Shown: piece by piece, positions 73 to 32,167 of the stretch
Layout: every line of letters starts with the position of its first letter
Position numbering within the stretch: position 1 is the first letter of the stretch
IMG/VR virus record: IMGVR_UViG_3300034073_005389
Coordinates: 124,001 to 188,000 of that record
DNA length: 64,000 nt
Reading direction: 5' to 3' (one strand)
Program-made: the position numbers and the translations under genes
Notes under the pieces: generated by a model
What the model saw: the letters and a program-made list of their open reading frames with translations, nothing else
Told to the model about the DNA's origin: nothing
Database searches by the model: none

Positions 73-726
73 CTATCCTTGCACTAAGTTATTACGTTCT
101 TTAATAGTATCATTTAATTGATCTTCTCTTCTATTAAATAATTCTAATATTAATGGTTTTTTGTGTTCTAATTTCATATTTAATTCATCGCCAACGGCAT
201 CTACCCAGCTGCTAGCTAAAATGTTTTCTTGAACATATGAAATAATTCTTTCTTCTACTAATTTATCTATTTCTTCAGATTTGTCTTGAATTTTTTCAAT
301 GGAAGAGACAATGTTTTTAGTAAATTCTTTAGAATTTAAATCATCAAATAAATCTACGAAATCATTTACAGCTTCTTCTAGTTCATCTACTGAATTAATA
401 TATGATTTCATTATTTTAATAATTTGAGTATCAGAGCCGAAAGTTTGCATAACTTTTACACATTTAAAAGCGACTTGTTTAAAGTCGTTAAAGTTTTTAA
501 CAGACTCATCACGATATCTTCTAATAGCGGCTCTGGTTTTAATAATTTCTTCAGTAGGAACTTCTGGGTTATCTTTAAAAGATGTTTTCATGATATTCAA
601 ATGATCACTTGCTTTTTTCAATTTTTTATTAGCATAATTAAAGCAAATAATAGCATTTTTTGCCTGATGCTTTTCAGCAACAGTCACGTCATAGCTCATT
701 TGAACAGAAGCGGCATTTTTTTTCAT
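73..726 (-). CDS. hypothetical helical protein, probably virion/head-associated
   Basis: 217-aa ORF in the structural operon; N-terminal MKKNAA fits the K-x-A motif of neighbouring genes. Confidence 0.8.
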   Translation of the reverse strand: MKKNAASVQMSYDVTVAEKHQAKNAIICFNYANKKLKKASDHLNIMKTSFKDNPEVPTEEIIKTRAAIRRYRDESVKNFNDFKQVAFKCVKVMQTFGSDTQIIKIMKSYINSVDELEEAVNDFVDLFDDLNSKEFTKNIVSSIEKIQDKSEEIDKLVEERIISYVQENILASSWVDAVGDELNMKLEHKKPLILELFNRREDQLNDTIKERNNLVQG

Positions 727-746
727 AATAATATTGTGTTTTATGC

Positions 747-1520
747 CTAATCATAAAAGAAGCCAGAGTAGTTTTCTACTGGACCTACTCCACGAATTCC
801 TGCATCGTTATTAAATAATCCTACTAAAGGTACTATATCTTTGTTTTCAGCAGGTTGTACAGGTCTATTATAATTTTCTCTAGTAGGAGATTGATCATTT
901 ATATACACATACAATGCATCCATAGGATATTGCCTTGTAGGAGTTAAATATGGGGCGAATGATCCTCGTCTGCCTTCATCTAAAAAAGTGTCTCTATTAT
1001 CTGAAATATATTCTCTTTGATTAGATACAATATTAGATCCATCTAATTTAGACATTAAATTATCTTTTTCTAATTTAGAGTTTCTAATTAATTTTTTAAA
1101 CAAAGTAACGACTTTAGGATCTAAACCAACTCCAAATCCTAATGAAACGGCTTCATTAATAGCATCTTCTGGGTCCATTCCTAAATATTTTGTTTTAAAT
1201 AATCCAATTAATAATCCAGTGCGGTCTTTTCCTGCATGACAATGTACGAAAGTAGGAGCATTATCTAATAAAAGTTCTTTTAGATTAAATTTTAATAATT
1301 TGAAAATATCTTCATATAAAGAATCAAATTCAATTGGAATAATAACTTGTTCAATATCTAATAGTTTACAAGCTCTTGAAATTCTATCAGCATCTAGTTG
1401 ATCTAAGCTAATAATTTTATTAATTTTTAACTTTTCTTTTAATAAACGAACATCGTCAGGGCTAGGAGCACTGCCTCGAAATAATAAATTAGGGATTACT
1501 TCTACAAAGCGATGTATCAT
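747..1520 (-). CDS. protein tyrosine / dual-specificity phosphatase
   Basis: Intact CX5R P-loop (FVHCHAGKDRTG), N-terminal LFRGSAP segment typical of the family, plus an unknown C-terminal extension. Confidence 0.88.
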   Translation of the reverse strand: MIHRFVEVIPNLLFRGSAPSPDDVRLLKEKLKINKIISLDQLDADRISRACKLLDIEQVIIPIEFDSLYEDIFKLLKFNLKELLLDNAPTFVHCHAGKDRTGLLIGLFKTKYLGMDPEDAINEAVSLGFGVGLDPKVVTLFKKLIRNSKLEKDNLMSKLDGSNIVSNQREYISDNRDTFLDEGRRGSFAPYLTPTRQYPMDALYVYINDQSPTRENYNRPVQPAENKDIVPLVGLFNNDAGIRGVGPVENYSGFFYD

Positions 1521-2254
1521 AAATACCTAACTAAGTTGTTAAGTACTTCTCTAATATACCTAGGATTATGGTTGAAAAGTACAGTTTTAACGAAGGTGAT
1601 TGATTGCCCTAAAGAAGATGAGGCGGGCATTTTTTTAGAACCTAGCTCATTTTCATTTAAATAATAAAATTTTTGTTTTAGTCTATTAATAGATTTTTGT
1701 CTTTTTGCTGGAGAGATTCTATTTAGGATAAATTTAACAATATTAGCTAAATAGTTGCCAACTGTTTTTGGATCACCTAAACTAGGTAGGGAGGCGGCTA
1801 CTTTGACTAATTTATTTTTTATTTTAATTTTATATAATTTTTTAAACTTTTTTAAAGCATGATCTAAGGCAACATTAGGAACATTCTTCATTTTGCTTTT
1901 AACAGCTTGATCAAAATAAAATTTATATTCTTTTATAAACTCATTAGCAATATCGGGATCAATTTTGTTTAATTCTCTCATGATAGCAGATAAAGAAAAG
2001 AACTTAATTTTAGATAAGTCTAATTCTTTTTTAGGCTTTAAATCTAAGGTATCTAAGTATTTAAAATATTCAACTTGTTTTAATCTTTTTTCAGCTGCCT
2101 TTTTAGAAGAAAAAGTACCTAAATTCCTATTTCTTTGAGAAAGGACTCTATATTTACCACTAGGCAATTTTTTTATTTTTGCAGATTTGACTATGGTATT
2201 CTGACAATGTTGTTGATAGATGTCAGATATTTTAACAAATTGATCTATTGTCAT
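1517..2254 (-). CDS. hypothetical phage protein
   Basis: 245-aa ORF with 4-nt overlaps to both neighbours; basic beta-hairpin-like segment GKYRVLSQRNRNLGTFSSKKAAEKRL; IVKSA and LVKVAA motifs. Confidence 0.8.
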   Translation of the reverse strand: MTIDQFVKISDIYQQHCQNTIVKSAKIKKLPSGKYRVLSQRNRNLGTFSSKKAAEKRLKQVEYFKYLDTLDLKPKKELDLSKIKFFSLSAIMRELNKIDPDIANEFIKEYKFYFDQAVKSKMKNVPNVALDHALKKFKKLYKIKIKNKLVKVAASLPSLGDPKTVGNYLANIVKFILNRISPAKRQKSINRLKQKFYYLNENELGSKKMPASSSLGQSITFVKTVLFNHNPRYIREVLNNLVRYL

Positions 2255-2652
2255 CTCCCAAAATTCTTTACTATTTCAGAGGCTTCTCTACTTCTTAAAA
2301 ACATATCTTCTAGGTTAACGCCATCGCATACGCTTAATGTTCTAATGGCTCTTTCACTAATAAACATTAATTTTCCTGTTTTTAATTGCTTATTGTTATC
2401 AACATAAGCAGCACTAATTACAAGACATTCTCGATATGCTCCAACAACTTTACCGCAAAAAACAGCTGGATATTCTATTGAAATTTGCTCAATAGATACT
2501 TGTTCATAAGCATCACCAAGATAAATCTCTACAAATTTATCTTTAAATAGTTCTGCTAAAAACTCAGCAAAAGTTTTACAAGAATTTTCTAATTTTTTAG
2601 ATAATTCTTGCACTTCGAATTCATTAACATGTTCCATGTTTTCCTCAAGCAA
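2251..2652 (-). CDS. hypothetical protein
   Basis: 133-aa ORF overlapping both neighbours in the operon. Confidence 0.75.
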   Translation of the reverse strand: MLEENMEHVNEFEVQELSKKLENSCKTFAEFLAELFKDKFVEIYLGDAYEQVSIEQISIEYPAVFCGKVVGAYRECLVISAAYVDNNKQLKTGKLMFISERAIRTLSVCDGVNLEDMFLRSREASEIVKNFGR

Positions 2653-3700
2653 ATTTAAGTAAAAATTTTCTACGATTAGAGTTAATTGCAGCAGAAGTTA
2701 ATTCTGTAATAGATGACTTTTTATTCAGTAAAATTTTTGCATTTATTTGATATTCTGGAGAGTCTTCTATTTTATTATTAAAATAATTGATATTTTTTTG
2801 TATAATTTCTTGTGCGGCTTGAACTGCTAAATATTTTGGAGCTGGGAAAGAAAAATTAATTTCTACTTTATTATTGTTTGAGTGAATGCTACAATTAGAA
2901 GAGAGTTCTTGTTCTAAATTAAAAGCCAATCTATTAGCAAATTCTATATTATTAACTATATCAGGAGAGCTGATTTTAATTAAAGCATGATAAGTTGGAA
3001 TATCAGATGCTGCAGACTCAAATTGTTTTATTAATTGTTCTACTTCATTAATATTTGAAGGCTCTTCTGATAATTGTTCTAATTCAGCCATAAAATTTTC
3101 TAATTGTGGTTGAGATAAATTTTTTTCTTCAATTATTTTTTCTATTTTTTGTTGATATTTAGGTAGATTATATTTTTTATAAAAATTTGTTAATCTTTCA
3201 GAATAAACTTCTGGAGGTGCAAGATAGTATTTAGCAGTTCTTTTTGATTTAGGGTCGCTAGACTTTTCTAATCCAGTTAATAATCCTTTAGAAAAATGGT
3301 AAGGATCTGGTTTAGCAGATTTAACTGCTTCCCAGGCATCTGGATATTTTTTCTTAATTAATTGTACATAGTCTCTGACTCCTGATTTTAAATCAGGGTA
3401 AGCTTTATATTTATTTTTAATTTTTTGACCAGGAATACCTGAAGTTTCTTCTACTGTTTTTTCATCAAAAACATATGGGTCATTACCAGTGGCAACAATA
3501 TGACCTACGTTATAATTGCTAATTAATTGAGCGTCACCTATTTCAAAAGCACTATGTGATAATAATAAAGTTAATTGTTCTTGGGTAGGAGGGACTCCTT
3601 CTATTTCAGCAAATACATCTGCAATAGTTTTAGCTAACTCCTCTATAGGAACAGGGGTTTTTTGTCTAGGAACAGATGGTCCGGCGCCTAATTTAAACAT
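2645..3700 (-). CDS. putative GH73/FlgJ-like peptidoglycan hydrolase (N-terminal domain) with unknown C-terminal domain
   Basis: SHSAFE(IG)...NYNVGHI...KYKAYPDLKSGVRDYVQLIKKKY...YYLAPPEVY follows the GH73 layout (catalytic Glu helix, NxxG, F/Y-x-x-Y-x-x-x-x-x-S/G, YxT-like motif). Confidence 0.55.
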   Translation of the reverse strand: MFKLGAGPSVPRQKTPVPIEELAKTIADVFAEIEGVPPTQEQLTLLLSHSAFEIGDAQLISNYNVGHIVATGNDPYVFDEKTVEETSGIPGQKIKNKYKAYPDLKSGVRDYVQLIKKKYPDAWEAVKSAKPDPYHFSKGLLTGLEKSSDPKSKRTAKYYLAPPEVYSERLTNFYKKYNLPKYQQKIEKIIEEKNLSQPQLENFMAELEQLSEEPSNINEVEQLIKQFESAASDIPTYHALIKISSPDIVNNIEFANRLAFNLEQELSSNCSIHSNNNKVEINFSFPAPKYLAVQAAQEIIQKNINYFNNKIEDSPEYQINAKILLNKKSSITELTSAAINSNRRKFLLKFA

Positions 3701-3710
3701 AATTTCCTTA

Positions 3711-5900
3711 TTATCTAATTCTAGATGCTATTCTATATAGACTGGTCGATAAGTTTTTGTTTTTATTTTGAATTAATTTAGCGTATTTCTTCATAAATGA
3801 AGAAACTAAGATAGGTGACTCAGAGGATAAAGATTGTAAAGTGTGCATAAAATTACTAATAAAAGCATTTGCTTCAAGTTCGTTGATTGGTATTTTTGAT
3901 AAAACTGTTGCAGTAACAAAAATTGAATCCTTTGGCAGAGAGAAAATTTCTCCAGAAATTTTAAAAACTTTACTATTTTCATCTGACATATTTTCGACAA
4001 GCGTAGCTTTGATAGGATCAGATGTCCCCACAATTGCATCAAATATTCCTTTAATAGAATATTCTATATCGTTAAAACTTTCAATATCTTTAAAATAATC
4101 ATTTAATTTTATTTTATTATTAAGATCTTCAACGACAGCCTGAATTTCTTTACCTTGAACATTTGCTATAAGTAATATGCTGTCTAAATTATTACTATCA
4201 GCAAATATATCTTTTTTAATTAAACGCTGATCGGGTTCAAGGACATCGTCAGAGTTAGTAGCTGGGTTTTCTTTAGCGGGTTCTAATTGTTCTTCAGGAG
4301 AGGGAGTATTTTCTTTTTCTTTTTCTTCTTTTGGATATATTAAATCATTTTTAGTTACAGAAGCTAAATAATTATTATATTTTATAGTAATTTTTCCAGT
4401 CACTGGATTATCATTAACTATTTTAACTGAGATATTTTCTTCTAAATCTCTAGTATCATTGTCAAAATTATTTTGTTTATCGATTAAAGATTCAGCAGAT
4501 CTACTTTGTAAAAAAATATTTTTTTTAAAAATATTTTTTTTAATTAATATATTATTCTCAGATTTAGGAGAATCTGGAGGCGATACCTCTGGAGGAGGTG
4601 CTTCTGGAGTGGGTTCTACGGCAGGCTCTACGGCAGGCACTTGTGGTTCTGCAGCAGCCTCTTGAACTTGTTTAGCGCCTTCATTTATTTGCTTAGCTGG
4701 AGTTGCCCCATCAACTTGCAATTCACTTACATCAACGTCTATCTCTTCACCTTCACTTTCTAATACAGCAGTATTATCATCATTTATCCTAGAAATAACT
4801 GCTTCTCTTTCATCACTTGTTTTTACAGGTGTACCAGGGGTTAAATCGCGTTGAGGAGAAGTATTTTGGTCAGGCAATAAAGAAGGCTGTGCCGCAGGGG
4901 CGCCTTTAGGTGCTGGTGGAGGTGCTACTACACCCGCATCTGCAACATTTGCTGCTAAAGCAGCAGAATCTACTGTCGGTTCAGATTCAGATTGCTGTAT
5001 TGCCTCTGGAGGAGCAATATCTTCCAATATATTATTTAAATTACTTTTATGTTTTTGAAAATTAGCGCTATTAATTACGCCAGAATATCTATCAACTTGA
5101 TCAATTATTGTTTTAGAAGCTTTGACATAATCTGCAATTTTTCTTTCTGCTCTAGCTCTAGACATAATATTGAGCTGATTTTGCAATACATTTAACAATC
5201 TATCTGAAGCAGATAAAACAGATCTAATATCGTTTCTTAAATCTTTACTTATTCCTGGTTGAATTCTTTCCCATAAATCTAAAGCAGATTTTCTTTGCAT
5301 TTTAGAAAATAAAGAACGAACCCAATTAATTAATCCTGCTTTTTTATAAAAGCCAGCTTTTTTAAATAATTTTTTGTTTTTAGAATAAGCAGTAACGGCA
5401 GGAACATCTTGTGATGGAATATATTTTGGATCTTTTGATTTAGTTAAAAATCTTAATACAGATTCTGCTTGTTCTTCGGTTAATGGGTCTGCTAGAGAAG
5501 AAAAATACTCTGCATTCAAAGAAACTATGATATGTTCTGCATTTTTTAATAATTGTGCACAGTATAGTACTTTTACATAAAACTGTTCTAAGTAAGAGAT
5601 AGAAACTAGATATTCTTTATTTTCATAAGCATCTTTAGCATTATCCAATATATTTTTAATAGGACCTGATGCTTCTGATAAATATGGTATTTGATCTCCA
5701 ATTTTTCTATTTAATAGAGTAGCTCTAACTTGATTATCTACTTCACGCAATTGGTTCATCATTGTACCAAAGACATTGCTTTTGCCTTCTAAATATCTGC
5801 CGCCTAAGAAAGTAAACTCTCTGAATCTATCAGAACGAGATCGTTCTTGGGCTACTTTTAATAAATTTTGATTGCGTGAAATAGTTGAAGATCTAGACAT
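3711..5900 (-). CDS. array paralogue 4 (729 aa), putative internal head/ejection protein
   Basis: Shares the N-terminal module (RATLL...GDQIPY...KEYLVSISYLEQFY) and C-terminal ESPI-V-SF-KKYA module with three adjacent ORFs. Confidence 0.85.
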   Translation of the reverse strand: MSRSSTISRNQNLLKVAQERSRSDRFREFTFLGGRYLEGKSNVFGTMMNQLREVDNQVRATLLNRKIGDQIPYLSEASGPIKNILDNAKDAYENKEYLVSISYLEQFYVKVLYCAQLLKNAEHIIVSLNAEYFSSLADPLTEEQAESVLRFLTKSKDPKYIPSQDVPAVTAYSKNKKLFKKAGFYKKAGLINWVRSLFSKMQRKSALDLWERIQPGISKDLRNDIRSVLSASDRLLNVLQNQLNIMSRARAERKIADYVKASKTIIDQVDRYSGVINSANFQKHKSNLNNILEDIAPPEAIQQSESEPTVDSAALAANVADAGVVAPPPAPKGAPAAQPSLLPDQNTSPQRDLTPGTPVKTSDEREAVISRINDDNTAVLESEGEEIDVDVSELQVDGATPAKQINEGAKQVQEAAAEPQVPAVEPAVEPTPEAPPPEVSPPDSPKSENNILIKKNIFKKNIFLQSRSAESLIDKQNNFDNDTRDLEENISVKIVNDNPVTGKITIKYNNYLASVTKNDLIYPKEEKEKENTPSPEEQLEPAKENPATNSDDVLEPDQRLIKKDIFADSNNLDSILLIANVQGKEIQAVVEDLNNKIKLNDYFKDIESFNDIEYSIKGIFDAIVGTSDPIKATLVENMSDENSKVFKISGEIFSLPKDSIFVTATVLSKIPINELEANAFISNFMHTLQSLSSESPILVSSFMKKYAKLIQNKNKNLSTSLYRIASRIR

Positions 5901-5931: not shown

Positions 5932-8499
5932 TCACATTATTCTTTTAGAAATTTTCATTAATTTTTGAGATAAATGTTTGTTGTTGGTAAGACGAGCATA
6001 TTTCTTCATAAATGAAGAAACTATAATAGGTGACTCATGAGATAATGCTTCTAAAGTGTAAATAAAATTGCTTTGTTTGTTTTGGTTGTCCTTATTTTGT
6101 TTATATAAAGCAATAGGAATTTTCTTTTCTGGATTAGTTAATATTTTATTTCCATTAGCTTTAAAAGTTATAACTCTACCTTTATCATCTTTTTCAATAT
6201 TTTCAAGATCATCAGGTAATGTGTAAGTTAAATAATATTTTCCTATGTCATAAGTTTTTAAATCTACTGCGGCAACTTTTACAGGTATTCTGTCTGGTAT
6301 TTTGGATTGATATTTATCAAATAATTGTTTAGAAATATTTTCCCCATATTCATTAAATCCAAAAATTTCTATTCTATGATTAACAACATCAGATTTATTA
6401 ATTTCTACATCGCTATCAATATTATAAATCGGTATTTCGCTTTCTAATTGAGATTCATCTATCTCTTTTTCTGGTTCTTTTCCTTTTGTTGAAATTTCTA
6501 CATCGCTACTTAAAGTAACTATCAAATATTCATTTTGCATTTGTACTTTAACATTAACTCCAGTAAGATCGCCCCCGCTAAAAATATCAATATTTTCTAA
6601 AATAATTTTTCTTTCTTTTAAAGCCCTTCTTAATTTGCCAACAACTATTCTTATAGGATATGAGCTAAAAGTTAAATTAATTATTAACTTAGCTCCTTTT
6701 TCAGGCAGCGTATCAGGTATTCCAGACTCTTTATCAAATCTATTTTTAATTGAATTTAATTGTTCTAGTGTTACGCCATTAATTTCAGCATTTATACTTT
6801 TAATATTGCAGGTAGTAAACATACCTGCATTTTTATTTAAGTCTAGTTTATTATATTTAATTTTTATTCTACCAATATTAGATCTAGCTCCAAGGACCTC
6901 TACCTGACTACCAAGATCTAATTCTACTTCCGTCATATTAGTTTCATCTACAGGAGCAGGTGCGTCGCCAGTAGGATTTCCTTCAGGAGATGCTGGTTCG
7001 GCTGGTGAGGCACCACCAGCTTCACCGTCAGATCCTCCACCAGCTTCTCCACCAACACCAGCTTCTTCACCAACACCAGCTTCTCCACCAGCAGCTTCTC
7101 CACCAGCAGCTTCTGGAGCAGCTGGTACGCTTGGTTGTCTAGGAGGAGGTAAATTTACTCCGCCATTTTCAACAATTACTTGAGCATCTGCAGCTTCTAA
7201 TGGTATTTGCGCTACAGGAACAACTTGCTCTTGACCATTTTCCTTATTTTCTACAGTAGCTTGATTATTATCTACACTTTTTACAGTAAACAAGCCTCTA
7301 ATTCCATTTATAACACCCCTAAAAAATTTGCCAATTAAACCTTTAGCATCATTAGGAATAGCTGCTGCTGGTGGTGGTGTAGCAGGATCAGCGGCAGCTT
7401 GAGCTTGTTGTTGTTGAAGTTGTTGCTGTTGAGGAGCATTAGCTGCAGGAGCACTAGTATTAGTTGGATTTTCTACTTGTGCCGCTAATTGAGGAGTAGG
7501 TTGAGCTACATTAGAATTATCTTTAGCTGCTTGTGCTTGCGCAGGAGTAGCCATTTGCTCTAATATTTTATTTAAACTGTCTGTATGCTTATTAAAATTT
7601 GCATTAGTAATAGTTCCGGAATAATTAGTAACTTTATTAACTAAGTCTTGAGAAAAACGATCATAATCTGCTATTTTTCTACCTGCCCTAGCCTCAGACA
7701 TTTTATTTAAATTAGTTTGAAAATTATTTAATAACCTATCAGAAGCAGATAATACTGTCCTGATATCGCGACTTAATTGCTTGCCAGCTCCAGGTTGAAT
7801 TCTTTCCCATAAATTCAAAGCAGATAATCTAGAATCAAATAACTCTTTTACCCAATCAATTAATCCAGCTGTTTTATGAAATTGAGCCTGCTTCCTCATA
7901 TTATAATTAATAGAAGATAGAGCAGCTAAATCTTTTGCATTCTGCTCTTTCATTCTCTTAATTTCTTCTCTGACTTCTGGAGAAAGATATTGTTCATTTT
8001 TTTGTTCTATTAAATAATTATAAATTCTTCTTTTTTGATCATCGGTTAAATCTTCTGCTAATGCTTTAAAATATTCTGCATTTAAATTTTTATTAATTTC
8101 ACTTACATTTTTTAATACTTGAGCACAATATAAAACTTTTTGATAAAATTGCTCTAAATAAGAAATAGAAACTAAATATTCTTTATTTTCATAATTTTTC
8201 TTGGCAGATTCCAATAAATCTTTTGCAGAAACTTCTCCAGCATATGGAATTTGATCTCCATATTTTTTACCAAGAAGAGTAGCTCTGACTAAATTGTCAG
8301 CCTGTCTTAATTGACCCATCATAACGCCAAAAATTTGTGTTTTATTTTCTAATCTTTTACCACCAAAATTTGACCATTCCAAAAACCTATCCGTCCAACC
8401 CCTATCTTGAGCAGTAACTATAATTTGGTTTGAGGTTTGGGCTGAGCTATAAACTTTTTGACTTGCTTTATAAACATTTAATGATGAAGTTCTAGACAT
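5932..8499 (-). CDS. array paralogue 3 (about 855 aa), putative internal head/ejection protein
   Basis: Same conserved termini. Start moved from track position 8547 to 8499 (MSRTSS, AAGGA RBS, matches MSRSS start of paralogue 4). Confidence 0.85.
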   Translation of the reverse strand: MSRTSSLNVYKASQKVYSSAQTSNQIIVTAQDRGWTDRFLEWSNFGGKRLENKTQIFGVMMGQLRQADNLVRATLLGKKYGDQIPYAGEVSAKDLLESAKKNYENKEYLVSISYLEQFYQKVLYCAQVLKNVSEINKNLNAEYFKALAEDLTDDQKRRIYNYLIEQKNEQYLSPEVREEIKRMKEQNAKDLAALSSINYNMRKQAQFHKTAGLIDWVKELFDSRLSALNLWERIQPGAGKQLSRDIRTVLSASDRLLNNFQTNLNKMSEARAGRKIADYDRFSQDLVNKVTNYSGTITNANFNKHTDSLNKILEQMATPAQAQAAKDNSNVAQPTPQLAAQVENPTNTSAPAANAPQQQQLQQQQAQAAADPATPPPAAAIPNDAKGLIGKFFRGVINGIRGLFTVKSVDNNQATVENKENGQEQVVPVAQIPLEAADAQVIVENGGVNLPPPRQPSVPAAPEAAGGEAAGGEAGVGEEAGVGGEAGGGSDGEAGGASPAEPASPEGNPTGDAPAPVDETNMTEVELDLGSQVEVLGARSNIGRIKIKYNKLDLNKNAGMFTTCNIKSINAEINGVTLEQLNSIKNRFDKESGIPDTLPEKGAKLIINLTFSSYPIRIVVGKLRRALKERKIILENIDIFSGGDLTGVNVKVQMQNEYLIVTLSSDVEISTKGKEPEKEIDESQLESEIPIYNIDSDVEINKSDVVNHRIEIFGFNEYGENISKQLFDKYQSKIPDRIPVKVAAVDLKTYDIGKYYLTYTLPDDLENIEKDDKGRVITFKANGNKILTNPEKKIPIALYKQNKDNQNKQSNFIYTLEALSHESPIIVSSFMKKYARLTNNKHLSQKLMKISKRIM

Positions 8500-8543: not shown

Positions 8544-11500
8544 TCAAACCATCATAGAAGCTATCTTTTTTAATTTATATGATATTTTTTTATTTTTCTT
8601 ATTAATTAAATTAGCGTACTTCCTAATAAAAGAAGCTACTATAATTGGAGATTCATAAGATAATTTTTCTAAAATATAAACAAAAGAAGCTTTTTTAGCG
8701 TTTTTGAGATCTTGCTCAGGAATTAAGGCAGTTAAAGTAGTTGGAGTATCAGATGTAGGATCTGCTATATCTGCCTCAACTAAATAATAAACTATATTAT
8801 CTATATTTTGCTTTTCTTTAATAGTTACTGTGATTGGATCATTTATATTATTAAGTATTTCTGGCAAACTTTTATGTTGTGGTTTTAAATTGTTAATAAA
8901 AATATTTTTACTAATACTTATTTTATCATTTACAGAAAATTTTATTTCTGATGAGATACTATCTGCTATAACTCTATAGTTATCTATTATTTTTTGTTGA
9001 TAATCTTTATTATTTGAACGCATCATCAATTCTTTAACTATTGTCTGAATTTCCCAAAGATGAGCGGTTGGTTCTAAGTTAAAAAACTTATAAGCTTTCT
9101 GTAATGGTGTAAGATCTTCTTCAGGCTCTACAGATGGAGCTACGGCAATTGTAGACTGTACACTTTGAGATCCATCAGGAATAGATTCAGAACCACCTTG
9201 AGATGATTCAAATTCTTGATAAATTTCTGGCATCATACTTCTTATGACATTAGGAAAGGCTCGTTCAGTAAAATTTTCAAATAACCCATATAATGGGCCA
9301 TATGTTTTATCTTGATAAAAAATAATAAAATCATATTTATCATTAGATGATGATAAAGAATATAATTCTGCTTGCAAATAATCCGGATTATTTACAATAT
9401 TTTCTTTTACTTCTCTTTTTACTTGTTCTTTTATATTTTTAACATCTTTAACATCTTTTAATTCTAAAATATTTTGTAAAGATGGCGACATTCCGGTTGT
9501 CAAATTTTCAAAAAAATATTCAGTAGGTATTTTTACATTTATTTTATTTGTTTTTAATTTTTCTTTAATTATATTATATAGTTTTTGTGCGGGACTTTGT
9601 TGTACAACGCTCGGTACACCTGAACTCTCATCAGGAATCGATACACCAACCTCACCACTGCTTAAAGTTGCAAATTGATTTAATTTGTTAAAACTAATTT
9701 CTATTTTAGGAGAATCAAATTTAGGTCCTAATACTGATTTTAAATCATTAATAATAACAAATGCTTTTTTGTTTTGTTCATCAATTGATTCTATTTTAAT
9801 TGTAACAATGTTTTTATCACTTAATGTAAAATGACTCAACTTCTCTGTACTTAAATCGTCCTCTGTTACTTTTTTATATCCCTTTTTTTCTAGATATAAT
9901 TGTAGCACATAATTATTTATTGCCGAGAAACCTTCTTTAGTATTAAAATCAAATAATTCTGCAACAGAAATACTTAAAATATCTCCTACTTTAAACTTAG
10001 ACTCTAATCCCTCTGCTCCAGGAATATCTGATGGCTCTTGACTTGGAACAGGAGTTTTAAATTTATTAAATTTATTTCTTATAAATTTATCAAAAAATTT
10101 ATCATATAATTTTTCATATTCTTGTAAAGAGTATTTTTTGCTTTGTTCAGGATCTTTTGCAATAATATCTTTAACTCTATCAATAGCGGCAAGTAATTCT
10201 GCTATCGGAATAGCTAAATTTGGATTTTCTATGTCATCATATTTATTTAAATTATTTAAAATAAAATTATTTTTATCTTTAATATACTGATCAAGATCTG
10301 CAACTCCTGATACATCAGGAGTTATTCCCGCGAGATTTGCTAATTTGCCAAATCTAATTCTTGCCTCATCTATTTCAATATTTTCTGGTGGTAAAGATAA
10401 TTGTTTGCCATCAGGAGTAATGACGGAAATTTGATTACTTTCCCTATCAATTCCTTGTATCTTAACTTCCTGCTCTTTACCATCAATAGTAGCCTTGGCT
10501 CCAGTATTTGCAGGTATTCCAATAAAATCTCTAAGAGAAATAACCGCCCTAGCAAACCAACTTTTATTAGGAATCGGTGGAACTGCATCTTGTAATGCTT
10601 TAGATGCCTCTGCTACAACCTCTACTGTAACAGGAGATAATTCTCCTGCTTGTTGTTTTGATAATTCTTCAATATTATCTAATTTTTGTTGCGCATCTTG
10701 CGCAGCATTAATAAGACTAGCCGCTGCCGCTTGTACTTGCTCAACCTTAGCCTTACCCATATTCTTAATAGATTTAATTAACCTATTAAAAAATCCAGCA
10801 GCCTCTCTAGCTTTAGGCTGATCTTGTTCTTGATTTAATTGTTCTTCAACTCGTTGTAAATCAGGTAATACTGCCTGTAATTGTTCAGGGGTTTTTCTAT
10901 CTAAATTTTCTAAATTTGCTTTAACTTCTGGCTTAATAGATAAATTAAGATCATTTAAATCAATTTCTATACTAGGAATGTTGGCTTCAGCTTGACCTAC
11001 TTGTCTAACTTGCTCAATACTCTGCTGTAAATTACTTAAAGAAGCCGCAGCTTGTTGAGCAGCTTCTTTAATTTCTGGAGTTGCTGGATTAGCAGCAGCT
11101 AATTGTTGTTGAGCAGCTTGTATTTGTGGTTGGGCTGCAACTACTGCTTGTACTACAGCAACTGTGGCGGCTGGAGTGGCAGGAGCAGCTGCAACTTGAG
11201 CAGGAGAGGGCGCTGGAGCAGAAGTATTAGAGTTATTTTTAACTTGAGCGGACAATTGTGAGCTTGGTGCGCTGGTAGTATTACCAACTTCTTTTTGTTG
11301 TTCTGGAGGAACAACATTATTTAAAATATTTTGCAATTGATCTGCATACTGACTAAAATTAACTCTATCAATAGAAGAAGAGTATTGATTTACTTGATCA
11401 ACAATATTTTTAGATGTTTTAACGTAATCTGCTACTTGTCTATCTATTCTGGCTTGAGACATCTTATTAAGATTAGTTTGTAAAACATTTAATAATCTAT

Positions 11501-19900: not shown

Positions 19901-19971
19901 GATTTATTTTGTAGATATTGTTCAGAATTTGATGGACCTGTCCAAATCTTACCATTTTTTGAAATTGACAT
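16963..19971 (-). CDS. portal protein containing an intein (1002-aa precursor, about 584 aa spliced)
   Basis: Next to terminase; NPFVHNAINLHSTYP and YEIRGTGLP segments, GGVALDVL, and an acidic/Pro-rich tail fit a portal; interrupted by a clear intein. Confidence 0.75.
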   Translation of the reverse strand: MSISKNGKIWTGPSNSEQYLQNKSQVPQVSALMAQSVSQSRRDNLANEVEQGFFRDGSATPSKNYTPTQNSNVVSSIGFKKVGQVVGTGGGFRGGNGDSVKQTPEVYSPLWLNSNLNLPRDRATINAWCRSFYALNPFVHNAINLHSTYPISKMNIKCPNKEIEKFFNDMIEELNLMNICVQIAQEYWLLGESFIYAELNETKGKWDRLLIQNPDYMVVKRTVIADEPLIMLRPDENLKKIIFSNKPADIEQKKQLNQHIIDSVKRGDNIPLENYNISHLARKISPYEIRGTGLPVCVFRQLMLFDKLRECYDEDTEVLTDKGFKKITDLLHFTSDINVNSNFVNGVLLNLDSKNMNQDSKNLSPDSIKILSMKEGFKVACVNPQNNQVEYHAPIEMHMSHYEGKMLHFTGKKVDCLVTPNHKMWVKESTNGKWGNFQKRTASSLLSKKKGYKLSSKANFNLTNDPESINVCGHNIPTDLYLKVLGYLASEGCIYSNFENGRYDAIISVNQLTSSDCYQDMKDAFSKFATFMGKKANHFIKTAGTGYSALTPKEIWSVSIHGKDIVAHFSNELGTNNQVSSHFKKLPRWTLELKPELMSILLEALVKGDGTEGFSKYGTGSKNYRYSTVSKQLADDVYELVYKLGYVPNICVSTAAKSDKRIVTEYIVMWSDTNYGVEPNVSSLPKKNNNGGGARIIEKDYNGVVWCFEVPTGLFVTRRNGKITIQGNSKYAQADNMINPLTLVKIGSAEFKPTFADLEAWRNIFEEAQYDKDFKVFTHEGVTVERVGYGAGIYDISGDITQLIKEIYTGLQAPSVIMDGGADTTYANGGVALDVLRQRYMQFRNMLSSWLKRKIFAPISKIQGFYDYSGGEKQLIVPEITWNHMSLFDTGDYINILSTLTQGEGDQKRASLHTLYHSLGLEFDDEVRKMRKEAIQSEISKKEKTALAALDLNTLRALDEEDEIPEPVEEGAGGGAPLPGEAPPGGPPPDLGAPPGEAPPPP
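17788..19041 (-). mobile_element. intein with LAGLIDADG homing endonuclease (418 aa)
   Basis: Block A CYDEDTEVLTDKG, block B TPNH, endonuclease blocks VLGYLASEG and LLEALVKGDG, block F/G VWCFEVPTGLFVTRRNGKITIQGN, then Ser+1. Confidence 0.93.
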
Positions 19972-23945: not shown

Positions 23946-24878
23946 TTATCCTTTATAATTTGAAGCCCAGTCAATACCGTCGCTGCTAGATACTTCTAAT
24001 GCATCTTCTGGCAAATATCCACGATCTTGACGTAAAGGATAGCCCATATCATCTAATAACTGTCTTACTTCTGCTTGTTCACGAACGCTTAATTTATATA
24101 ATTTAACTTGTTTTTCGTATGTATTTTCAATATCATGACCAGCAGAAACCATACCGTTAATACAAACTCTAGCAATTCTAGAAATCAATAAAGGAACAGT
24201 AACATACACACCTTGTACGCCTGTAATTTTTTGAGCTTCTTTTACAAAACCCATAGGAATTACTTCTGCTTCAGATTTTTTCTTTTTCTTGGTTTTTCTT
24301 ACTTTTTCTAATCTATCTTCTAATCTTTGTAATCCATCATCAATAGTTGATCTGATTGCTTCTACTTTATCTGCATCTAAAGCTCCATCTAAATCTAGTC
24401 TCATAGCTTTAGATATTTCATTATCTAATCTTTGTAGATATGAGATGGCTCTTTCTAATCCAGCAGTATCCATACCTGAGTGGCGGGGGACAGAATCTAC
24501 TCTATCTTTTACCCAGACAACAAATCCATGATGACCTTTGGATTCCCAGTCCCATTTATCTTCTTTTTTAGATTTGCGGGCATCATTGGTATCGCCTTTA
24601 TCTTCTTTGTCTTCTTTATCTTCCACTATAATTTCAGGTGCATCTTCTGCGCCAGGAACATCTGGTAATGTAATCTCAATCTCTACTTTCTCAGGATGCA
24701 AAATATTTAAGCTATTTGGAGCCTCATGCATATGCTGATGTTCTCCATGAGAATGAGATGGCATAGCTGGTAACATAGGAGATAATACGGGCTCTAAAGA
24801 AGATAAAGGAGGAGATACATCACCTTCAAAAGATGGATCCACGACTACTAATTCTTGAGCAAGAGTCATTAATGACAT
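23946..24878 (-). CDS. hypothetical head-region protein
   Basis: 310 aa, FVKEAQ motif, acidic/Pro-rich N-terminus, GAGG RBS. Confidence 0.8.
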   Translation of the reverse strand: MSLMTLAQELVVVDPSFEGDVSPPLSSLEPVLSPMLPAMPSHSHGEHQHMHEAPNSLNILHPEKVEIEITLPDVPGAEDAPEIIVEDKEDKEDKGDTNDARKSKKEDKWDWESKGHHGFVVWVKDRVDSVPRHSGMDTAGLERAISYLQRLDNEISKAMRLDLDGALDADKVEAIRSTIDDGLQRLEDRLEKVRKTKKKKKSEAEVIPMGFVKEAQKITGVQGVYVTVPLLISRIARVCINGMVSAGHDIENTYEKQVKLYKLSVREQAEVRQLLDDMGYPLRQDRGYLPEDALEVSSSDGIDWASNYKG

Positions 24879-29307: not shown

Positions 29308-29336
29308 GTAAATTATACTTACAAGATTGAACCATG

Positions 29337-30050
29337 TCAGTTATTATAACCCAAGCGTCCCTCTCGTGTATCGAAGATAGCATGTGCTGGTTCGCTTAAG
29401 TGTTGAGTCTGCTGTGAAACACTGCCTCCAGGCACTTTACCACCATTGCTTAAAGTAAATCCAGTGTCATAATTATAGATTTTTTTATCTAAATCACATT
29501 GCCAAGTATGCTCTCCTACTCTGGCAATTTGCGCACCGGGATGGTCAGGACATGTACGAGTGCTAAGGGGTGCTTGCAAAATTCTATAATCCTTTGTCAT
29601 ACCGCTATCTTCTACTGCTTTTTGAGCATCAGCTAACATATTAGTTTCTACTAAATCTTGACGAGGATCTATATATTTTTTTCTTAAAGCATCCATCCTA
29701 GCATCTTCTGAAGCTTTTTTAGCAGCTATAGCTCCTGGAGGAGCGGCAATGCTTAACAATAATTCATCTAATACAGAGGCTTGCTTTTTTAATTCTAAAT
29801 CACCAGAAGCATCAAATACAGCAGCTAAGTTAGCTAGTTTTTCTACTGCTTCTGGAGTAATCTTAGATTCTTCTGGAGGCTCTATATGATCTACTTCTTC
29901 TGCTGCATTTTTTAATAAAGCGGCAGCCAATACGCAAGAATTAGCAACTACTTTCATGCATTTTGCATCAGCTTCGGCTAACATCAAAGCTTCATTGTTT
30001 GGACTTTCTAGCCAGGATGCAATTGAATATAACATTTCAGAAATTCTCAT
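29337..30050 (-). CDS. hypothetical protein with C-terminal zinc-ribbon-like motif
   Basis: 237 aa; TCPDHPG...WQC motif. Confidence 0.8.
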   Translation of the reverse strand: MRISEMLYSIASWLESPNNEALMLAEADAKCMKVVANSCVLAAALLKNAAEEVDHIEPPEESKITPEAVEKLANLAAVFDASGDLELKKQASVLDELLLSIAAPPGAIAAKKASEDARMDALRKKYIDPRQDLVETNMLADAQKAVEDSGMTKDYRILQAPLSTRTCPDHPGAQIARVGEHTWQCDLDKKIYNYDTGFTLSNGGKVPGGSVSQQTQHLSEPAHAIFDTREGRLGYNN

Positions 30051-30060
30051 AATGCCTCAT

Positions 30061-31677
30061 TTATCCAAAGATTTTAGCATTCATAAAAGAAGCGCCTTCA
30101 TAACTCTCTGACATGCCTCTACGATATAGTGGTCTGTGATTGCCTTCGTTATCAATATATATTTTGTTGATGGGTAATCCAGTTTGCTTGGAGATAGGAA
30201 GTTTGCTATGTGCAGTTACATAGAAGTCATTTGCATTATACATAGGATGTTGTGTAATGTCTTGCTTCTTGTAATTTAACCCAGAAGCATATACATGGAA
30301 ACCAGTAGCATATGCTTTAGTATCGCCGCTAGAAGCAAGTACATTTAATGCATCTTCTGCCTTAGCAAGATTACCTTCTGATATTGCTTCTCTAATATTA
30401 TTAATTAAATCACTGGGTTTAACGCTAAACAATGGAGATGCTGTAGCAGCAACTTTGTAATCTGTTTGATTGTCGATGTATAGTTGATTAATGCCGTCTT
30501 CATCAAATGATGATACAGATCCATTGCAAATTAACATTCCAGGCTTTTGTAATTTGTTGTTAGCAAATTTAACAGGAACGGTAAAGGCTACTTTGCCAGC
30601 ATCTAATGAAACTCCGTAGAAAATAGTAGATTGATCACTGCCAGTAACTATAATTTGTGGGTTCTTATGACCAAATCCATGGAGTTCACGAGCAATATGG
30701 CTCATAGCTAGTTTTACCTTATCTTCGCCAAATTGGAAAGAAACTTGACCATAAGGAGAGGTAAATTGCTCTTCAAATGACTTAAATTCGTCAGACTGAG
30801 CTAATTTAATTTCTCCTGGAGCTTTTTCATCTACTTTAAGACCTAACACTTGATTTTGAGTAAAATCTGATTGAACTTGGCGAGAAGCATTTAATCTAAC
30901 TACAGCTAATTCTGCATCACTCACTTCACGATTATCAGAAGCTGCTTTAGTTAATACTTCTAAAATATTAGAACCAGTAACTTTTAATTTGCTACCAGCA
31001 TTTTTACGTAAATAGCCTTTTACGTTGTTATTATTAAGCTCTTGGGGTCCAGCGTTACCCATAAATACCATGGCTTGTGATACTTTGTTGGAGCGAACTT
31101 CTACTGGAACATAAAAACTAGTAATTCCTTTAGGAGTATCGTAATCTGCTTTAATAACTAAGAATTTCTCATTACCATCTATTACTTGTAGATTGGAGGG
31201 TCTTAAATTCCAAGAATCTAAATTTTTGCTTACATCACTGGCAGCTTTATCGGCTAAAGCTTGAGAATACATTTTTAATGGAACATTCTTATCAAAAACA
31301 CTATTTAAAGCGTTGCTAAGAACAGGATTTGCTGCCGCATACACATTAACCTCACCAGCATCGTCTCTTTGATGTAAGGTAGGTTCTGGTAATTGATCTG
31401 ATAATCCTAATTCCTCAGAAAATAATTGAGCAAATTTAGTGTTTCTAGAAAAAAGTTTATGATATAAATTTTTAAATTCAGCTTTACGAATAAACAAATT
31501 ATTGTTATCCGCCATTTTTTCAATCACTCTAGCCATAGAACCAAGTGTTTGATCCTCTGGATATGAATGCAAGCATTTAGCCAATTTCACAGATAATACT
31601 GGAATTGCTAATCTTTCATGATCCTCTACTCTTTGAGCGAGGGAACCTACTAATTGCTGTATTTTATCGAAGCTCAT
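30061..31677 (-). CDS. hypothetical, probably structural protein
   Basis: 538 aa; IKLAQ and YKVAA motifs; head-cluster context. Confidence 0.8.
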   Translation of the reverse strand: MSFDKIQQLVGSLAQRVEDHERLAIPVLSVKLAKCLHSYPEDQTLGSMARVIEKMADNNNLFIRKAEFKNLYHKLFSRNTKFAQLFSEELGLSDQLPEPTLHQRDDAGEVNVYAAANPVLSNALNSVFDKNVPLKMYSQALADKAASDVSKNLDSWNLRPSNLQVIDGNEKFLVIKADYDTPKGITSFYVPVEVRSNKVSQAMVFMGNAGPQELNNNNVKGYLRKNAGSKLKVTGSNILEVLTKAASDNREVSDAELAVVRLNASRQVQSDFTQNQVLGLKVDEKAPGEIKLAQSDEFKSFEEQFTSPYGQVSFQFGEDKVKLAMSHIARELHGFGHKNPQIIVTGSDQSTIFYGVSLDAGKVAFTVPVKFANNKLQKPGMLICNGSVSSFDEDGINQLYIDNQTDYKVAATASPLFSVKPSDLINNIREAISEGNLAKAEDALNVLASSGDTKAYATGFHVYASGLNYKKQDITQHPMYNANDFYVTAHSKLPISKQTGLPINKIYIDNEGNHRPLYRRGMSESYEGASFMNAKIFG

Positions 31678-31699
31678 GTAAGCATCCTATTCGGTAATA

Positions 31700-32167
31700 T
31701 TAAACTAATTCAGGGTACTTATTTAATACCGCATTTTTAGCTGAAACAGATAATTCATTCAACAATGACTTAACTAATTTCTTATTCTCGGCTAACTTAG
31801 CAGGCAAATAACTTTCAACTTGATTTAATTCTTGTGGAGGTATCCCTAATTTACTAGCTGAAACTCTAACAATAGGATCTCCTTTATAAGAAACTTCTAC
31901 TGCATTTGCTGTTTTAAGCACATTAACTTCCCATTCAGATTTCTTGATAGTATCTTCTGGATTGTAAATAGCTATGATATAGTCCCCATCATCAGCATTT
32001 TGAATCTGCCATAAATTAGCCGCCGCATCATTTTCTTTAAATCTAACAATATCAAAAGCTACTTTCTCTATTTTGTCTTGTACCTCTGATAGTTTATAAG
32101 CTTTTTTATAAATTTTGTTATCTAATTTTGAGTAATCAAGATTAAATTTTGGCATCATATCTCCCAT
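31700..32167 (-). CDS. hypothetical protein
   Basis: 155 aa; IYKKAY motif. Confidence 0.75.
   Translation of the reverse strand: MGDMMPKFNLDYSKLDNKIYKKAYKLSEVQDKIEKVAFDIVRFKENDAAANLWQIQNADDGDYIIAIYNPEDTIKKSEWEVNVLKTANAVEVSYKGDPIVRVSASKLGIPPQELNQVESYLPAKLAENKKLVKSLLNELSVSAKNAVLNKYPELV

What the first reader, a model, noticed from the sequence alone, without database searches (positions are those of the whole stretch)
73..32167. Recurrent hydrophobic-K-x-A motif across head-region proteins: putative prohead-protease cleavage code
Seen: LLKVAQ, FYKKAG, FHKTAG, FNKLAQ, FYKTAG, AKKASF, MYKVAQ, FVKTAA, YKKAF, LVKVAA, IVKSA, NKKIAG, FVKEAQ, IIKKAI, IKYAY, YKFAQ, IKLAQ, YKVAA, IYKKAY. In the four paralogues the motif sits at the same aligned positions, at module borders. 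Known: T4 gp21 and phiKZ gp175 cut many head proteins at short Glu-ending motifs. Inference: this lineage uses a K-x-A-specific maturation protease (not seen in this window), so the motif could flag internal head proteins genome-wide. Lys and Ala are abundant, so enrichment needs a formal test.
Basis: partly seen in the sequence, partly recalled or inferred. Interest (0 to 1): 0.7.

Follow-up and report, generated by a model that had tools for sequence, protein, structure and literature searches.

The report
Candidate head-protease cutting motif, K-x-A
Head-assembly proteins of this 361-kb jumbo phage, and of two distantly related phage groups that share its capsid-maturation protease, carry about twice the expected number of a short motif (hydrophobic-x-Lys-x-Ala followed by Gly/Ser/Ala/Gln), which is most simply read as that protease's cutting signal, although no cut has been observed.

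Summary
All 19 listed strings exist. The refined motif K-x-A-[GSAQ], usually with a hydrophobic residue two positions before the Lys, occurs 37 times against 14.8 expected in window 73-32167. It is still 20 against 7.7 without the four paralogues. It is at expectation in the replication half of the window and in the rest of the genome. Only the K-x-A spacing is enriched.

The motif replicates in phage G (28 vs 8.3 in its head module, top of 400 gapped pairs). It also replicates, as [KR]-x-A-[GSAQ], in mycobacteriophage Cali (42 vs 20). Both phages share the protease family.

That protease lies about 700 bp left of the window. It carries an intein and a ~950-residue C-terminal extension. A model of a phage-G-like homologue has the T4 gp21 / herpesvirus-assemblin fold.

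The four paralogues belong to a family of at least 313 clusters. Most members begin M-x-K-x-A-Q and keep a second L-x-K-E-A-G site in a predicted disordered linker.

Cleavage is inferred, not shown. Some listed instances are false positives: one lies in the portal intein and five do not fit the refined motif.

The parts
16963..19971 (-). Portal protein (1002 aa), interrupted by an intein.
   Evidence: phrog_16240 portal, E 2e-46. 40%/30% identity to phage G portal gp14 in two blocks, residues 104-311 and 732-933.
17791..19041 (-). Intein with a LAGLIDADG domain inside the portal (residues C311-N727, with +1 Ser728). It contains the motif match FIKTAG, which is therefore not a plausible head-protease site.
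   Evidence: PF14528 hit at residues 601-663. The insertion falls exactly between the two phage G homology blocks. The boundary residues read DKLRE|C...QGN|S.
12322..16914 (-). Paralogue 1 (1530 aa). Site 1 is MYKVAQ (nt 16885-16896). Site 2 is FVKTAA (nt 16438-16449). There are three further K.A[GSAQ] matches.
   Evidence: Alignments A1/A2; coordinates.
8544..12269 (-). Paralogue 2 (1241 aa). Site 1 is FNKLAQ (nt 12171-12182). Site 2 is FYKTAG (nt 11625-11636). C-terminal matches are AKKAS|F (nt 8685-8696) and KKIAS (nt 8556-8567).
5932..8499 (-). Paralogue 3 (855 aa from the start used by database relatives). Site 1 is degenerate (IIVTAQ, no Lys). Site 2 is tandem, MRKQAQ-FHKTAG (nt 7864-7893).
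   Evidence: (P0001 is 855 aa).
3711..5900 (-). Paralogue 4 (729 aa). Site 1 is LLKVAQ (nt 5847-5858). Site 2 is tandem, LFKKAG-FYKKAG (nt 5334-5363).
   Evidence: AlphaFold2 model of residues 1-340: helical modules at 40-145 and 200-295, with both sites in pLDDT<50 segments.
1517..2254 (-). 245-aa protein with LVKVAA|S (nt 1793-1804). The site is positionally conserved as K-x-A-A in more distant relatives. A second match, SSKKAAE, is not conserved.
   Evidence: L042 has VVKIAAK at residue 153 and L041 has LTKQAAT at residue 151.
73..726 (-). 217-aa protein that begins MKKNA|AS, i.e. M-x-K-x-A-A at the extreme N-terminus.
30061..31677 (-). 538-aa orphan protein with six K.A[GSAQ] matches. It is the strongest single-protein outlier in the genome.
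   Evidence: 6 vs 0.97 expected, p 5e-4. No Pfam, PHROG or Atlas identification.
29337..30050 (-). 237-aa Ala-rich orphan protein with three matches.
23946..24878 (-). 310-aa protein with FVKEAQ (nt 24231-24242), conserved as LVKEAQ in relative L042.
21368..23227 (-). Large terminase subunit. It anchors the packaging/head module and has one motif match, probably by chance.
   Evidence: phrog_675, E 1e-59.
2645..3700 (-). 351-aa lysozyme-like protein with no motif. It is part of the conserved portal-to-protease gene string.
   Evidence: Weak PF01832 hit. The orthologue in L041 hits PF01832 (unmarked; faint in L040), and the L042 protein at this position hits SLT / Phage_lysozyme2.
747..1520 (-). 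257-aa tyrosine/dual-specificity phosphatase with no motif. It is part of the same conserved string.
   Evidence: PF13350/PF03162 hits. Conserved in L005, L006, L041 and L042.
32225..64000 (-). Control region: the DNA replication/recombination module (DNA polymerase, UvsX-like recombinase, clamp-loader-like ATPase, SbcCD, HNH endonuclease). No motif enrichment.
   Evidence: for annotation; for counts.

Best explanation
The motif [L/F/M/I]-x-K-x-A followed by G/S/A/Q is the recognition signal of the phage's own capsid-maturation (prohead) protease. This is an assemblin / T4 gp21-fold serine protease encoded just left of the window.

Inferred mechanism: during prohead maturation the enzyme cuts after the Ala. 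This trims short N-terminal leaders. It separates the two helical modules of the portal-adjacent paralogue family at a disordered linker. It also processes the protease's own extension and other packaged proteins.

Shown here:
- The enrichment, its spacing specificity and its restriction to head-module genes.
- Replication in three lineages that share the protease family.
- Deep conservation of the sites in the paralogue family.
- The protease fold, on a homologue.

Inferred:
- That the motif is cut at all.
- Which bond is cut.
- Which individual matches are real sites.
For: 1. Spacing- and context-specific enrichment confined to head-module proteins: own phage 57 vs 27, rest of genome 96 vs 89.5.
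2. An unbiased scan of 400 gapped dipeptides puts K.A at rank 1 in the phage G head module and rank 8 in this one. The higher-ranked pairs here include low-complexity G.G, A.A and A.P. In the rest of each genome K.A ranks 92 and 318.
3. Independent replication:
   - Phage G: K.A[GSAQ] 28 vs 8.3, z 7.
   - G-like contigs: L037 11 vs 2.4, L039 11 vs 4.8.
   - Mycobacteriophage Cali: [KR].A[GSAQ] 42 vs 20 (z 5.5) in head genes, 18 vs 13.7 in other genes, with recurrent [KR]TAG.
   - All share the gp19-type protease.
4. Protease fold. An AlphaFold2 model of a G-like homologue matches T4 gp21 (Z 9.4) and herpesvirus proteases (Z 8.3-8.4). From general knowledge, not checked here, herpesvirus assemblins cut (V/L/I)-x-A|S, which is the same P1/P1' pair.
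5. Protease's own sites. In 121 G-like proteases LEKVAS sits at the end of the catalytic domain. It fits K.A[GSAQ] in 79 of them. A variable, low-pLDDT linker and a conserved tail follow it. This is the layout expected for autoprocessing.
6. Paralogue family, 145 cluster representatives examined:
   - 129 have K-x-A-Q near the N-terminus, 117 of them with Lys at residue 3. Conservation: K3 94%, A5 96%, Q6 98%.
   - P5 is Met1, and in 11 of the 12 members with an N-terminal extension it is M, I, L or F.
   - 117 of 145 have the mid-protein site, with P5 L/F/I/M and P1' Gly.
7. Both paralogue sites lie in predicted disordered segments.
8. N-terminal matches are enriched genome-wide: own 8 vs 2.8, phage G 12 vs 2.9, including three MKRL[IM]-type leaders.
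9. Sites are positionally conserved in the relatives L041 and L042.
Against: - There is no direct evidence of cleavage. The 2025 phage G paper reports no processing sites.
- The complex prediction of protease plus site peptide gave no answer.
- Sites show only a mild N-terminal bias: 23% of sites fall within the first 60 residues, which hold 14% of all residues.
- Phage G gp20 and gp21 and the phage G MCP carry no match.
- One G-like contig (L038) shows no enrichment, and its protease has LEKVAN.
- This phage's protease lacks the LEKVAS-equivalent site.
- The conserved C-terminal I-x-K-Y-A of the paralogue family has no [GSAQ] preference at P1'.
- Some conserved matches lie in folded cores (portal SK[FY]AQA, the decoration-protein GK[IL]A[GA]) and are more likely structural.
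- Removing only five residues (MxKxA) from most family members has no obvious purpose.
Confidence: 0.6

Rival explanations
1. The motif is a short linear docking or capsid-targeting signal that is bound but not cut. The partner could be the portal, the coat protein interior, or an exosite of the protease. The signal would recruit proteins into the prohead.
For: - It explains the same head-module enrichment and the conservation.
- It fits the extreme N-terminal position, where cutting would remove only five residues.
- It fits the C-terminal I-x-K-Y-A motif, which has a free P1'.
- It fits the weak N-terminal bias.
Against: - The P1' preference for small residues or Gln, the Ala at the position equivalent to assemblin P1, and the assemblin fold of the co-occurring protease are specific predictions of a cleavage site.
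- The motif flanks the catalytic domain of the protease itself at order/disorder boundaries.
- Tandem doubled sites in a disordered linker are typical of processing sites.
Confidence: 0.2
2. There is no shared function. The excess comes from a few protein families in which K-x-A happens to be structurally conserved (the paralogues, the portal core, the decoration protein), plus chance.
For: - Part of the signal in the window comes from four paralogues that share sites by descent.
- Some conserved matches are in folded cores.
- The [GSAQ] class was defined after inspection.
Against: - Enrichment persists without the paralogues: 20 vs 7.7 and 40 vs 20.
- It is spread over non-homologous orphan proteins.
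- It is specific to one spacing.
- It replicates, with the pre-defined motif, in phage G, two G-like contigs and Cali, whose head proteins are mostly not detectably homologous to these.
Confidence: 0.1
3. The motif is cut, but by a different enzyme: a host protease, or a second phage protease such as a ClpP-type enzyme.
For: - Phage G encodes ClpP/ClpX that are found in particles.
- Host-protease processing of phage head proteins is known in some Firmicute phages (general knowledge, not checked here).
Against: - The hosts of the three lineages are unrelated: a Bacillus/Lysinibacillus relative, Mycobacterium, and an unknown host of an AT-rich environmental phage. The gp19-type protease is what the three phages share.
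- The motif occurs on that protease itself.
Confidence: 0.05

Closest known systems
T4 gp21 prohead protease and its L/I-x-E sites, including the short N-terminal capsid-targeting leaders of internal proteins
   Same: - Same fold. It is the best structural match, Z 9.4.
- A three-residue-spaced motif shared by many head and internal proteins.
- Probable autoprocessing at both ends of the protease.
- Short N-terminal leaders that end in the motif.
   Different: - P1 would be Ala rather than Glu, and P3 is Lys/Arg.
- No Pfam S77 match.
- The protease carries a ~950-residue extension and an intein.
- Leaders can be as short as five residues.
phiKZ gp175 / SPN3US gp245 prohead proteases (S/A/G-x-E and A-x-E codes) with paralogous families of cleaved internal head proteins
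   Same: - A jumbo phage with multiple large paralogues next to the head genes.
- Multiple motif copies per propeptide.
- A Ser preference at P1' (PMC10052503).
   Different: - A different motif: basic P3 and Ala P1, against Ala P3 and Glu P1.
- A different protein family.
- Cleavage in phiKZ and SPN3US is proven by mass spectrometry. Here it is only inferred.
Herpesvirus assemblin maturational and release sites, (V/L/I)-x-A|S
   Same: - Same fold class, Z 8.3-8.4.
- Ala at the putative P1 and a small residue (often Ser) at P1'.
   Different: - P3 is Lys/Arg rather than aliphatic, and the hydrophobic residue sits at P5.
- The assemblin consensus is cited from general knowledge, not re-checked here.
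Phage G gp19 head maturation protease and the Bxz1-like mycobacteriophage protease-extension protein (Cali gp93)
   Same: - True homologues of this phage's protease: 33% identity over about 110-170 residues.
- Cali gp93 shares the protease plus ~1000-residue extension architecture.
- The same motif is enriched in their head modules.
   Different: - P1' usage differs: Q/S/G/A here, S/A/G in phage G.
- Cali uses Arg as often as Lys at P3.
- Phage G gp19 is a 300-residue protein without an extension or intein.
- Phage G has no detectable member of the paralogue family.

Membership tests
Assemblin / T4 gp21-fold prohead (capsid maturation) serine protease | Herpesvirus-protease-like fold | tested here: met
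   An AlphaFold2 model of G-like homologue P0008 (core pLDDT >90) matches 5jbl T4 gp21 at Z 9.4 and herpesvirus proteases at Z 8.3-8.4. This was tested on a homologue, not on this phage's intein-split protein, which is 33% identical over 168 residues.
Assemblin / T4 gp21-fold prohead (capsid maturation) serine protease | Conserved catalytic His and Ser | tested here: inconclusive
   His129 and Ser180 are invariant in 47 G-like sequences. The matching motifs IDH and SVSMG are present in this phage's protein. Equivalence to the gp21 catalytic residues was not checked in three dimensions.
Assemblin / T4 gp21-fold prohead (capsid maturation) serine protease | Match to curated family models | tested here: inconclusive
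   No hit to Pfam S78 or S77 anywhere in the genome. phrog_18299 'head maturation protease' matches at E 5.6e-13.
Assemblin / T4 gp21-fold prohead (capsid maturation) serine protease | Gene lies between the portal and major capsid protein genes | tested here: met
   Portal at genome 140963-143971, protease at 118554-123302, MCP at 103146-105406, all on the minus strand.
Prohead-protease cleavage code (as in T4 L/I-x-E, phiKZ/SPN3US A-x-E) | Short motif over-represented in head proteins relative to composition and to non-head proteins | tested here: met
   Replicated.
Prohead-protease cleavage code (as in T4 L/I-x-E, phiKZ/SPN3US A-x-E) | Motif present at the boundaries of the protease's own catalytic domain (autoprocessing) | tested here: inconclusive
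   Met in G-like proteases: LEKVAS in 79 of 121, followed by a disordered linker. This phage's protein lacks that site, though it has the N-terminal FKKTAS and several matches in the extension.
Prohead-protease cleavage code (as in T4 L/I-x-E, phiKZ/SPN3US A-x-E) | Sites define N-terminal propeptides | tested here: inconclusive
   N-terminal matches are enriched: 8 vs 2.8 here and 12 vs 2.9 in phage G. The paralogue family starts M-x-K-x-A-Q. Overall, however, sites are spread along the proteins.
Prohead-protease cleavage code (as in T4 L/I-x-E, phiKZ/SPN3US A-x-E) | Cleavage observed in mature virions | not testable with these tools
   No proteomic data are accessible. PMC7316594 is not held, and no supplements are held for PMC12484599.
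Herpesvirus assemblin site (V/L/I)-x-A|S | Aliphatic P3, Ala P1, Ser P1' | tested here: not met
   Ala and small/Ser residues fit P1 and P1'. P3 is Lys (or Arg in Cali), not aliphatic. This is a resemblance only.

The most novel reading that the evidence does not exclude
A large, previously unrecognised clade of assemblin-fold prohead proteases shares one cleavage code, hydrophobic-x-[K/R]-x-A|[G/S/A/Q]. The clade includes phage G-like megaphages, Bxz1-like mycobacteriophages and this environmental jumbo-phage group. The code's P1/P1' pair converges on that of herpesvirus assemblins. It would mark a widespread portal-adjacent helical protein family (at least 313 clusters) as a dedicated substrate with a minimal five-residue MxKxA propeptide. 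It could also be used to predict packaged or ejected proteins directly from the sequence of uncultured giant phages.
Probability: 0.5. Interest if true: 0.7.

Novelty: new variant of a known kind. Interest (0 to 1): 0.6.

Why it matters
Cleavage codes are known for only a few prohead proteases (T4, phiKZ/SPN3US, HK97-type). In those systems the codes have been the main route to identifying internal and ejected head proteins.

A sequence-readable code for the gp19-type protease family would have three uses:
- It would let packaged proteins be nominated in phage G, in cluster C mycobacteriophages and in many uncultured jumbo phages.
- It would give a testable specificity link between phage and herpesvirus maturation proteases.
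- It would assign a first functional handle to an orphan family of at least 313 clusters that sits next to the portal gene.

It can be tested with virion mass-spectrometry data that already exist for phage G.

Tried and rejected
- **IMG/VR pattern scan** with the paralogue alignment found no relatives.
- **Megablast of the portal gene** against phage records found nothing.
- **Pfam S78, S77 and Phage_capsid models** found nothing in the genome. The protease and MCP were found only through phage G proteins.
- **PHROG and Pfam scans** of the paralogues, of the 538-aa and 237-aa proteins, and of distant family members gave no hits.
- **ESM Atlas searches** gave no lead.
- **Foldseek search** with the paralogue model returned only generic helical bundles.
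- **PDB sequence search** with phage G gp19 found nothing.
- **Literature:** PMC7316594 (phage G structure and proteomics) is not held. No supplements are held for the 2025 phage G paper. Three searches found no report of a K-x-A code. The Felix O1 hit was irrelevant.
- **Helical periodicity or Lys/Ala richness** as an explanation was rejected, because neighbouring spacings and related residue pairs are at expectation.
- **Close relatives L005 and L006** are too similar (72-99% identity) to test site conservation in the non-paralogue proteins.
- **Rfam** found no group I intron model in the MCP interruption.

Full report
**Setting**

The window is bases 124001-188000 of a 361,490-bp viral record that CheckV estimates as 97% complete. 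It is AT-rich (about 29-37% GC) and almost entirely coded on the minus strand.

Reading along the minus strand, the left half of the window holds:
- a set of orphan genes (32167-23299);
- the large terminase (21368-23227);
- an HNH endonuclease;
- the portal (16963-19971);
- four large paralogues of 1530, 1241, 855 and 729 aa;
- a lysozyme-like protein, three small proteins and a tyrosine phosphatase.

The right half (32-64 kb) is a replication and recombination module: DNA polymerase, UvsX-like recombinase, a clamp-loader-like ATPase and SbcCD. It is therefore a fair non-virion control.

**The observation**

With per-protein shuffles, the left half is enriched for K.A (89 vs 68). It is strongly enriched for hydrophobic-(x)-K-x-A-[GQA] (31 vs 7.1, z 8). 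The right half is not enriched.

I then used shuffles within 40-residue blocks, which preserve local composition, on the whole head module (genome 103-156 kb):
- Only the K.A spacing is enriched (156 vs 110, z 5.1).
- KA, K..A, K...A, AK, A.K, A..K, R.A, K.S, K.G and E.A are all at expectation.
- The excess is carried by K.A[GSAQ] (57 vs 27, z 5.8), not by K.A followed by other residues.
Without the four paralogues it is 20 vs 7.7 (p 1.6e-4).
- The rest of the genome has 96 vs 89.5.
- The residue two positions before the Lys (P5 if Ala is P1) is hydrophobic in 56% of sites, against a 31% background.

Composition, helical periodicity and paralogy are therefore excluded as sufficient explanations.

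**The missing protease and capsid protein**

Pfam models for prohead proteases and HK97-type capsids find nothing in the genome. The phage G proteins do.

The MCP is 53% identical to phage G gp27. It lies about 20 kb left of the window and is split by a ~1.16-kb insertion that carries a LAGLIDADG ORF.

Phage G gp19 is annotated as the head maturation protease (PMC12484599). It matches residues 477-637 of a 1582-aa ORF at genome 118554-123302, only about 700 bp outside the window. That ORF has these features:
- It contains an intein (residues ~106-478) inserted in the invariant ANDNGDFF motif.
- It retains the IDH and SVSMG motifs that align with the invariant His and Ser of the family.
- It continues into a ~950-residue extension.

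An AlphaFold2 model of a phage-G-like homologue (47-sequence alignment, core pLDDT >90) matches T4 gp21 best (Z 9.4). Herpesvirus proteases follow at Z 8.3-8.4.

**Independent replication**

The motif was defined on this window and then tested elsewhere.

| Genome or contig | Test | Observed vs expected |
|---|---|---|
| Phage G, first 15.7 kb | K.A[GSAQ], composition-based expectation | 21 vs 5.1 |
| Phage G, head module | K.A[GSAQ], local 40-residue shuffles | 28 vs 8.3 (z 7) |
| G-like contig L037 | K.A[GSAQ] | 11 vs 2.4 |
| G-like contig L039 | K.A[GSAQ] | 11 vs 4.8 |
| G-like contig L038 | K.A[GSAQ] | 6 vs 4.8 (not significant) |
| Cali, head genes | [KR].A | 96 vs 64 (z 4.8) |
| Cali, head genes | [KR].A[GSAQ] | 42 vs 20 (z 5.5) |
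| Cali, neighbouring non-head genes | [KR].A[GSAQ] | 18 vs 13.7 |

Further points:
- The rest of the phage G genome is near expectation.
- An unbiased scan of all 400 gapped dipeptides ranks K.A first in the phage G head module and 92nd elsewhere. In this phage it ranks 8th in the head module and 318th elsewhere. The higher-ranked pairs here include low-complexity G.G, A.A and A.P.
- Cali is a Bxz1-like mycobacteriophage. Its gp93 is a homologous protease fused to a ~1000-residue extension, as in this phage.
- Cali shows recurrent [KR]-T-A-G.

The motif thus travels with the protease family across very different hosts and base compositions.

**The paralogues**

The four proteins share a ~330-residue N-terminal region and a ~30-residue C-terminal motif (ESPIIVSSF.KKYA). 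Between them lie unrelated, often low-complexity middles.

Site 1 ([LFM]-x-K-x-A-Q) follows a variable leader of 4-30 residues. Site 2 is a tandem pair, for example LFKKAG-FYKKAG or MRKQAQ-FHKTAG. It follows a variable Lys/Glu-rich linker. An AlphaFold2 model gives two helical modules (40-145 and 200-295), with both sites in segments of pLDDT below 50.

A profile search of 1.84 billion cluster representatives found 313 relatives, mostly 400-550 aa. Among 145 of them:
- 129 have K-x-A-Q near the N-terminus, 117 of them with Lys at residue 3. The typical start is M-x-K-x-A-Q-K-R.
- K3, A5 and Q6 are 94-98% conserved, among the most conserved columns of the family.
- P5 is Met1, and in 11 of the 12 members with an N-terminal extension it is M, I, L or F.
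- 117 carry the mid-protein site (P5 L/F/I/M, P1' Gly in 90).
- 96 carry a C-terminal I-x-K-Y-A.

Synteny is conserved in relatives that have a single ~420-905-aa copy. The order is portal, family member, lysozyme-like protein, small protein, 245-aa protein, phosphatase, 217-aa protein, protease-extension. No fold or family match identifies the protein. Its role as a scaffold or packaged protein is inference only.

**Other support**

- In 121 phage-G-like proteases, LEKVAS closes the catalytic domain. A variable, disordered linker and a conserved tail follow it. This is the arrangement expected of an autoprocessing site.
- Orthologue alignments show positionally conserved sites with varying flanks in the gp9-like proteins and the portal N-terminus of G-like phages.
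- The same holds between this phage and its relatives L041 and L042. It applies to the 245-aa protein, to three sites in the protease extension, to two sites in the gene after the protease, and to the 310-aa protein.
- Matches starting within the first 16 residues are enriched genome-wide (8 vs 2.8 here, 12 vs 2.9 in phage G). They include three dispersed phage G genes that begin MKRL[IM], and several genes of this phage outside the head module with h-h-K-[IVLD]-A-Q leaders.
- The best Shine-Dalgarno-supported start of this phage's MCP gives a 26-residue leader ending LVKYA|S. The phage G MCP lacks this leader. This point is weak.

**Limits**

- Cleavage has not been observed. The one accessible phage G proteomics paper reports no processing sites. 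The structural paper is not held.
- The protease-peptide complex prediction gave no answer.
- Sites are only mildly N-terminal.
- Phage G gp20, gp21 and its MCP have no match.
- This phage's protease lacks the LEKVAS-equivalent site.
- The family's C-terminal K-Y-A has no P1' preference.
- Some matches are clearly not sites. FIKTAG lies inside the portal intein. SK[FY]AQA is a conserved portal-core motif at the extein junction.
- The scissile bond (after Ala) is inferred from two things. One is the assemblin precedent, cited from general knowledge. The other is that the minimal N-terminal form M-x-K-x-A-Q leaves nothing upstream to recognise.

**Comparison and verdict**

The system works like the T4 gp21 (L/I-x-E) and phiKZ/SPN3US (A-x-E; PMC10052503) cleavage codes, but with a basic P3 and an Ala P1. 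The P1/P1' pair resembles that of herpesvirus assemblins. I found no report of such a code in the searchable literature.

I rate it a new variant of a known kind. The statistical observation is firm. The proteolytic interpretation is probable (about 0.6) but unproven. The main rival is a docking signal that is bound but not cut.

Noticed in passing
window 17791-19041 (minus strand): The portal gene carries an intein of about 417 residues with a LAGLIDADG domain. It sits between DKLRE|C and QGN|S, exactly where the homology to the phage G portal is interrupted.
   Followed up: partly
outside the window: genome 118554-123302 (L003:14554-19302, minus strand): The prohead protease gene also carries a LAGLIDADG intein (residues ~106-478), inserted in the invariant ANDNGDFF motif. 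The gene encodes a ~950-residue C-terminal extension with internal repeats (YFQGGGGVNEPTPG...). Mycobacteriophage Cali gp93, annotated there as a tape measure, has the same protease-plus-extension architecture.
   Followed up: partly
outside the window: genome 103146-105406 (L008/L009): The major capsid protein gene (53% identical to phage G gp27) is split after VVDPL by a ~1.16-kb insertion encoding a 312-aa LAGLIDADG-type ORF. Stop codons break the frame, so it looks like an intron rather than an intein. Rfam found no group I intron model at E<=0.01.
   Followed up: partly
window 20622-21365 and 32225-33112; genome 123310-123909 and 114263-115471: The head module holds an unusually dense set of homing-type endonuclease genes (three HNH, one GIY-YIG), in addition to the two inteins and the MCP insertion.
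   Followed up: no
window 747-1520 and 2645-3700: A tyrosine/dual-specificity phosphatase and a lysozyme-like protein lie in a conserved gene string between the portal and the protease. The string is shared with the distant relatives L041 and L042, where the protein at the lysozyme-like position hits Glucosaminidase (L041) or SLT/lysozyme (L042). They are candidates for packaged or ejected enzymes, but they carry no K-x-A-[GSAQ] match.
   Followed up: partly
phage G (L011-L035): genes at 11937, 28218 and 207449: Three dispersed small phage G proteins begin with near-identical leaders: MKRLISKTAA, MKRLIKKAS and MKRLMKKSFYKQAG. The pattern is reminiscent of the T4 capsid-targeting sequences that end in the protease motif.
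   Followed up: partly
window 12322-16914 and 16963-17100: The paralogues have long low-complexity tracts: a (GA)n run, Glu/Asp/Gly-rich and Ala/Pro-rich stretches in the 1530-aa protein, and GGEA repeats in the 855-aa protein. The portal ends in a Pro/Gly/Ala-rich tail.
   Followed up: no
genome 69771-70706, 107490-108716, 209165-209749 and 283669-284355: Genes, three of them far from the head module (107490-108716 lies within it), whose products start with h-h-K-[IVLD]-A-Q leaders like those of the paralogues (e.g. MNVDKLLKIAQK, MRRSDIFEEFVKIAQD). They are candidate additional substrates or packaged proteins.
   Followed up: no
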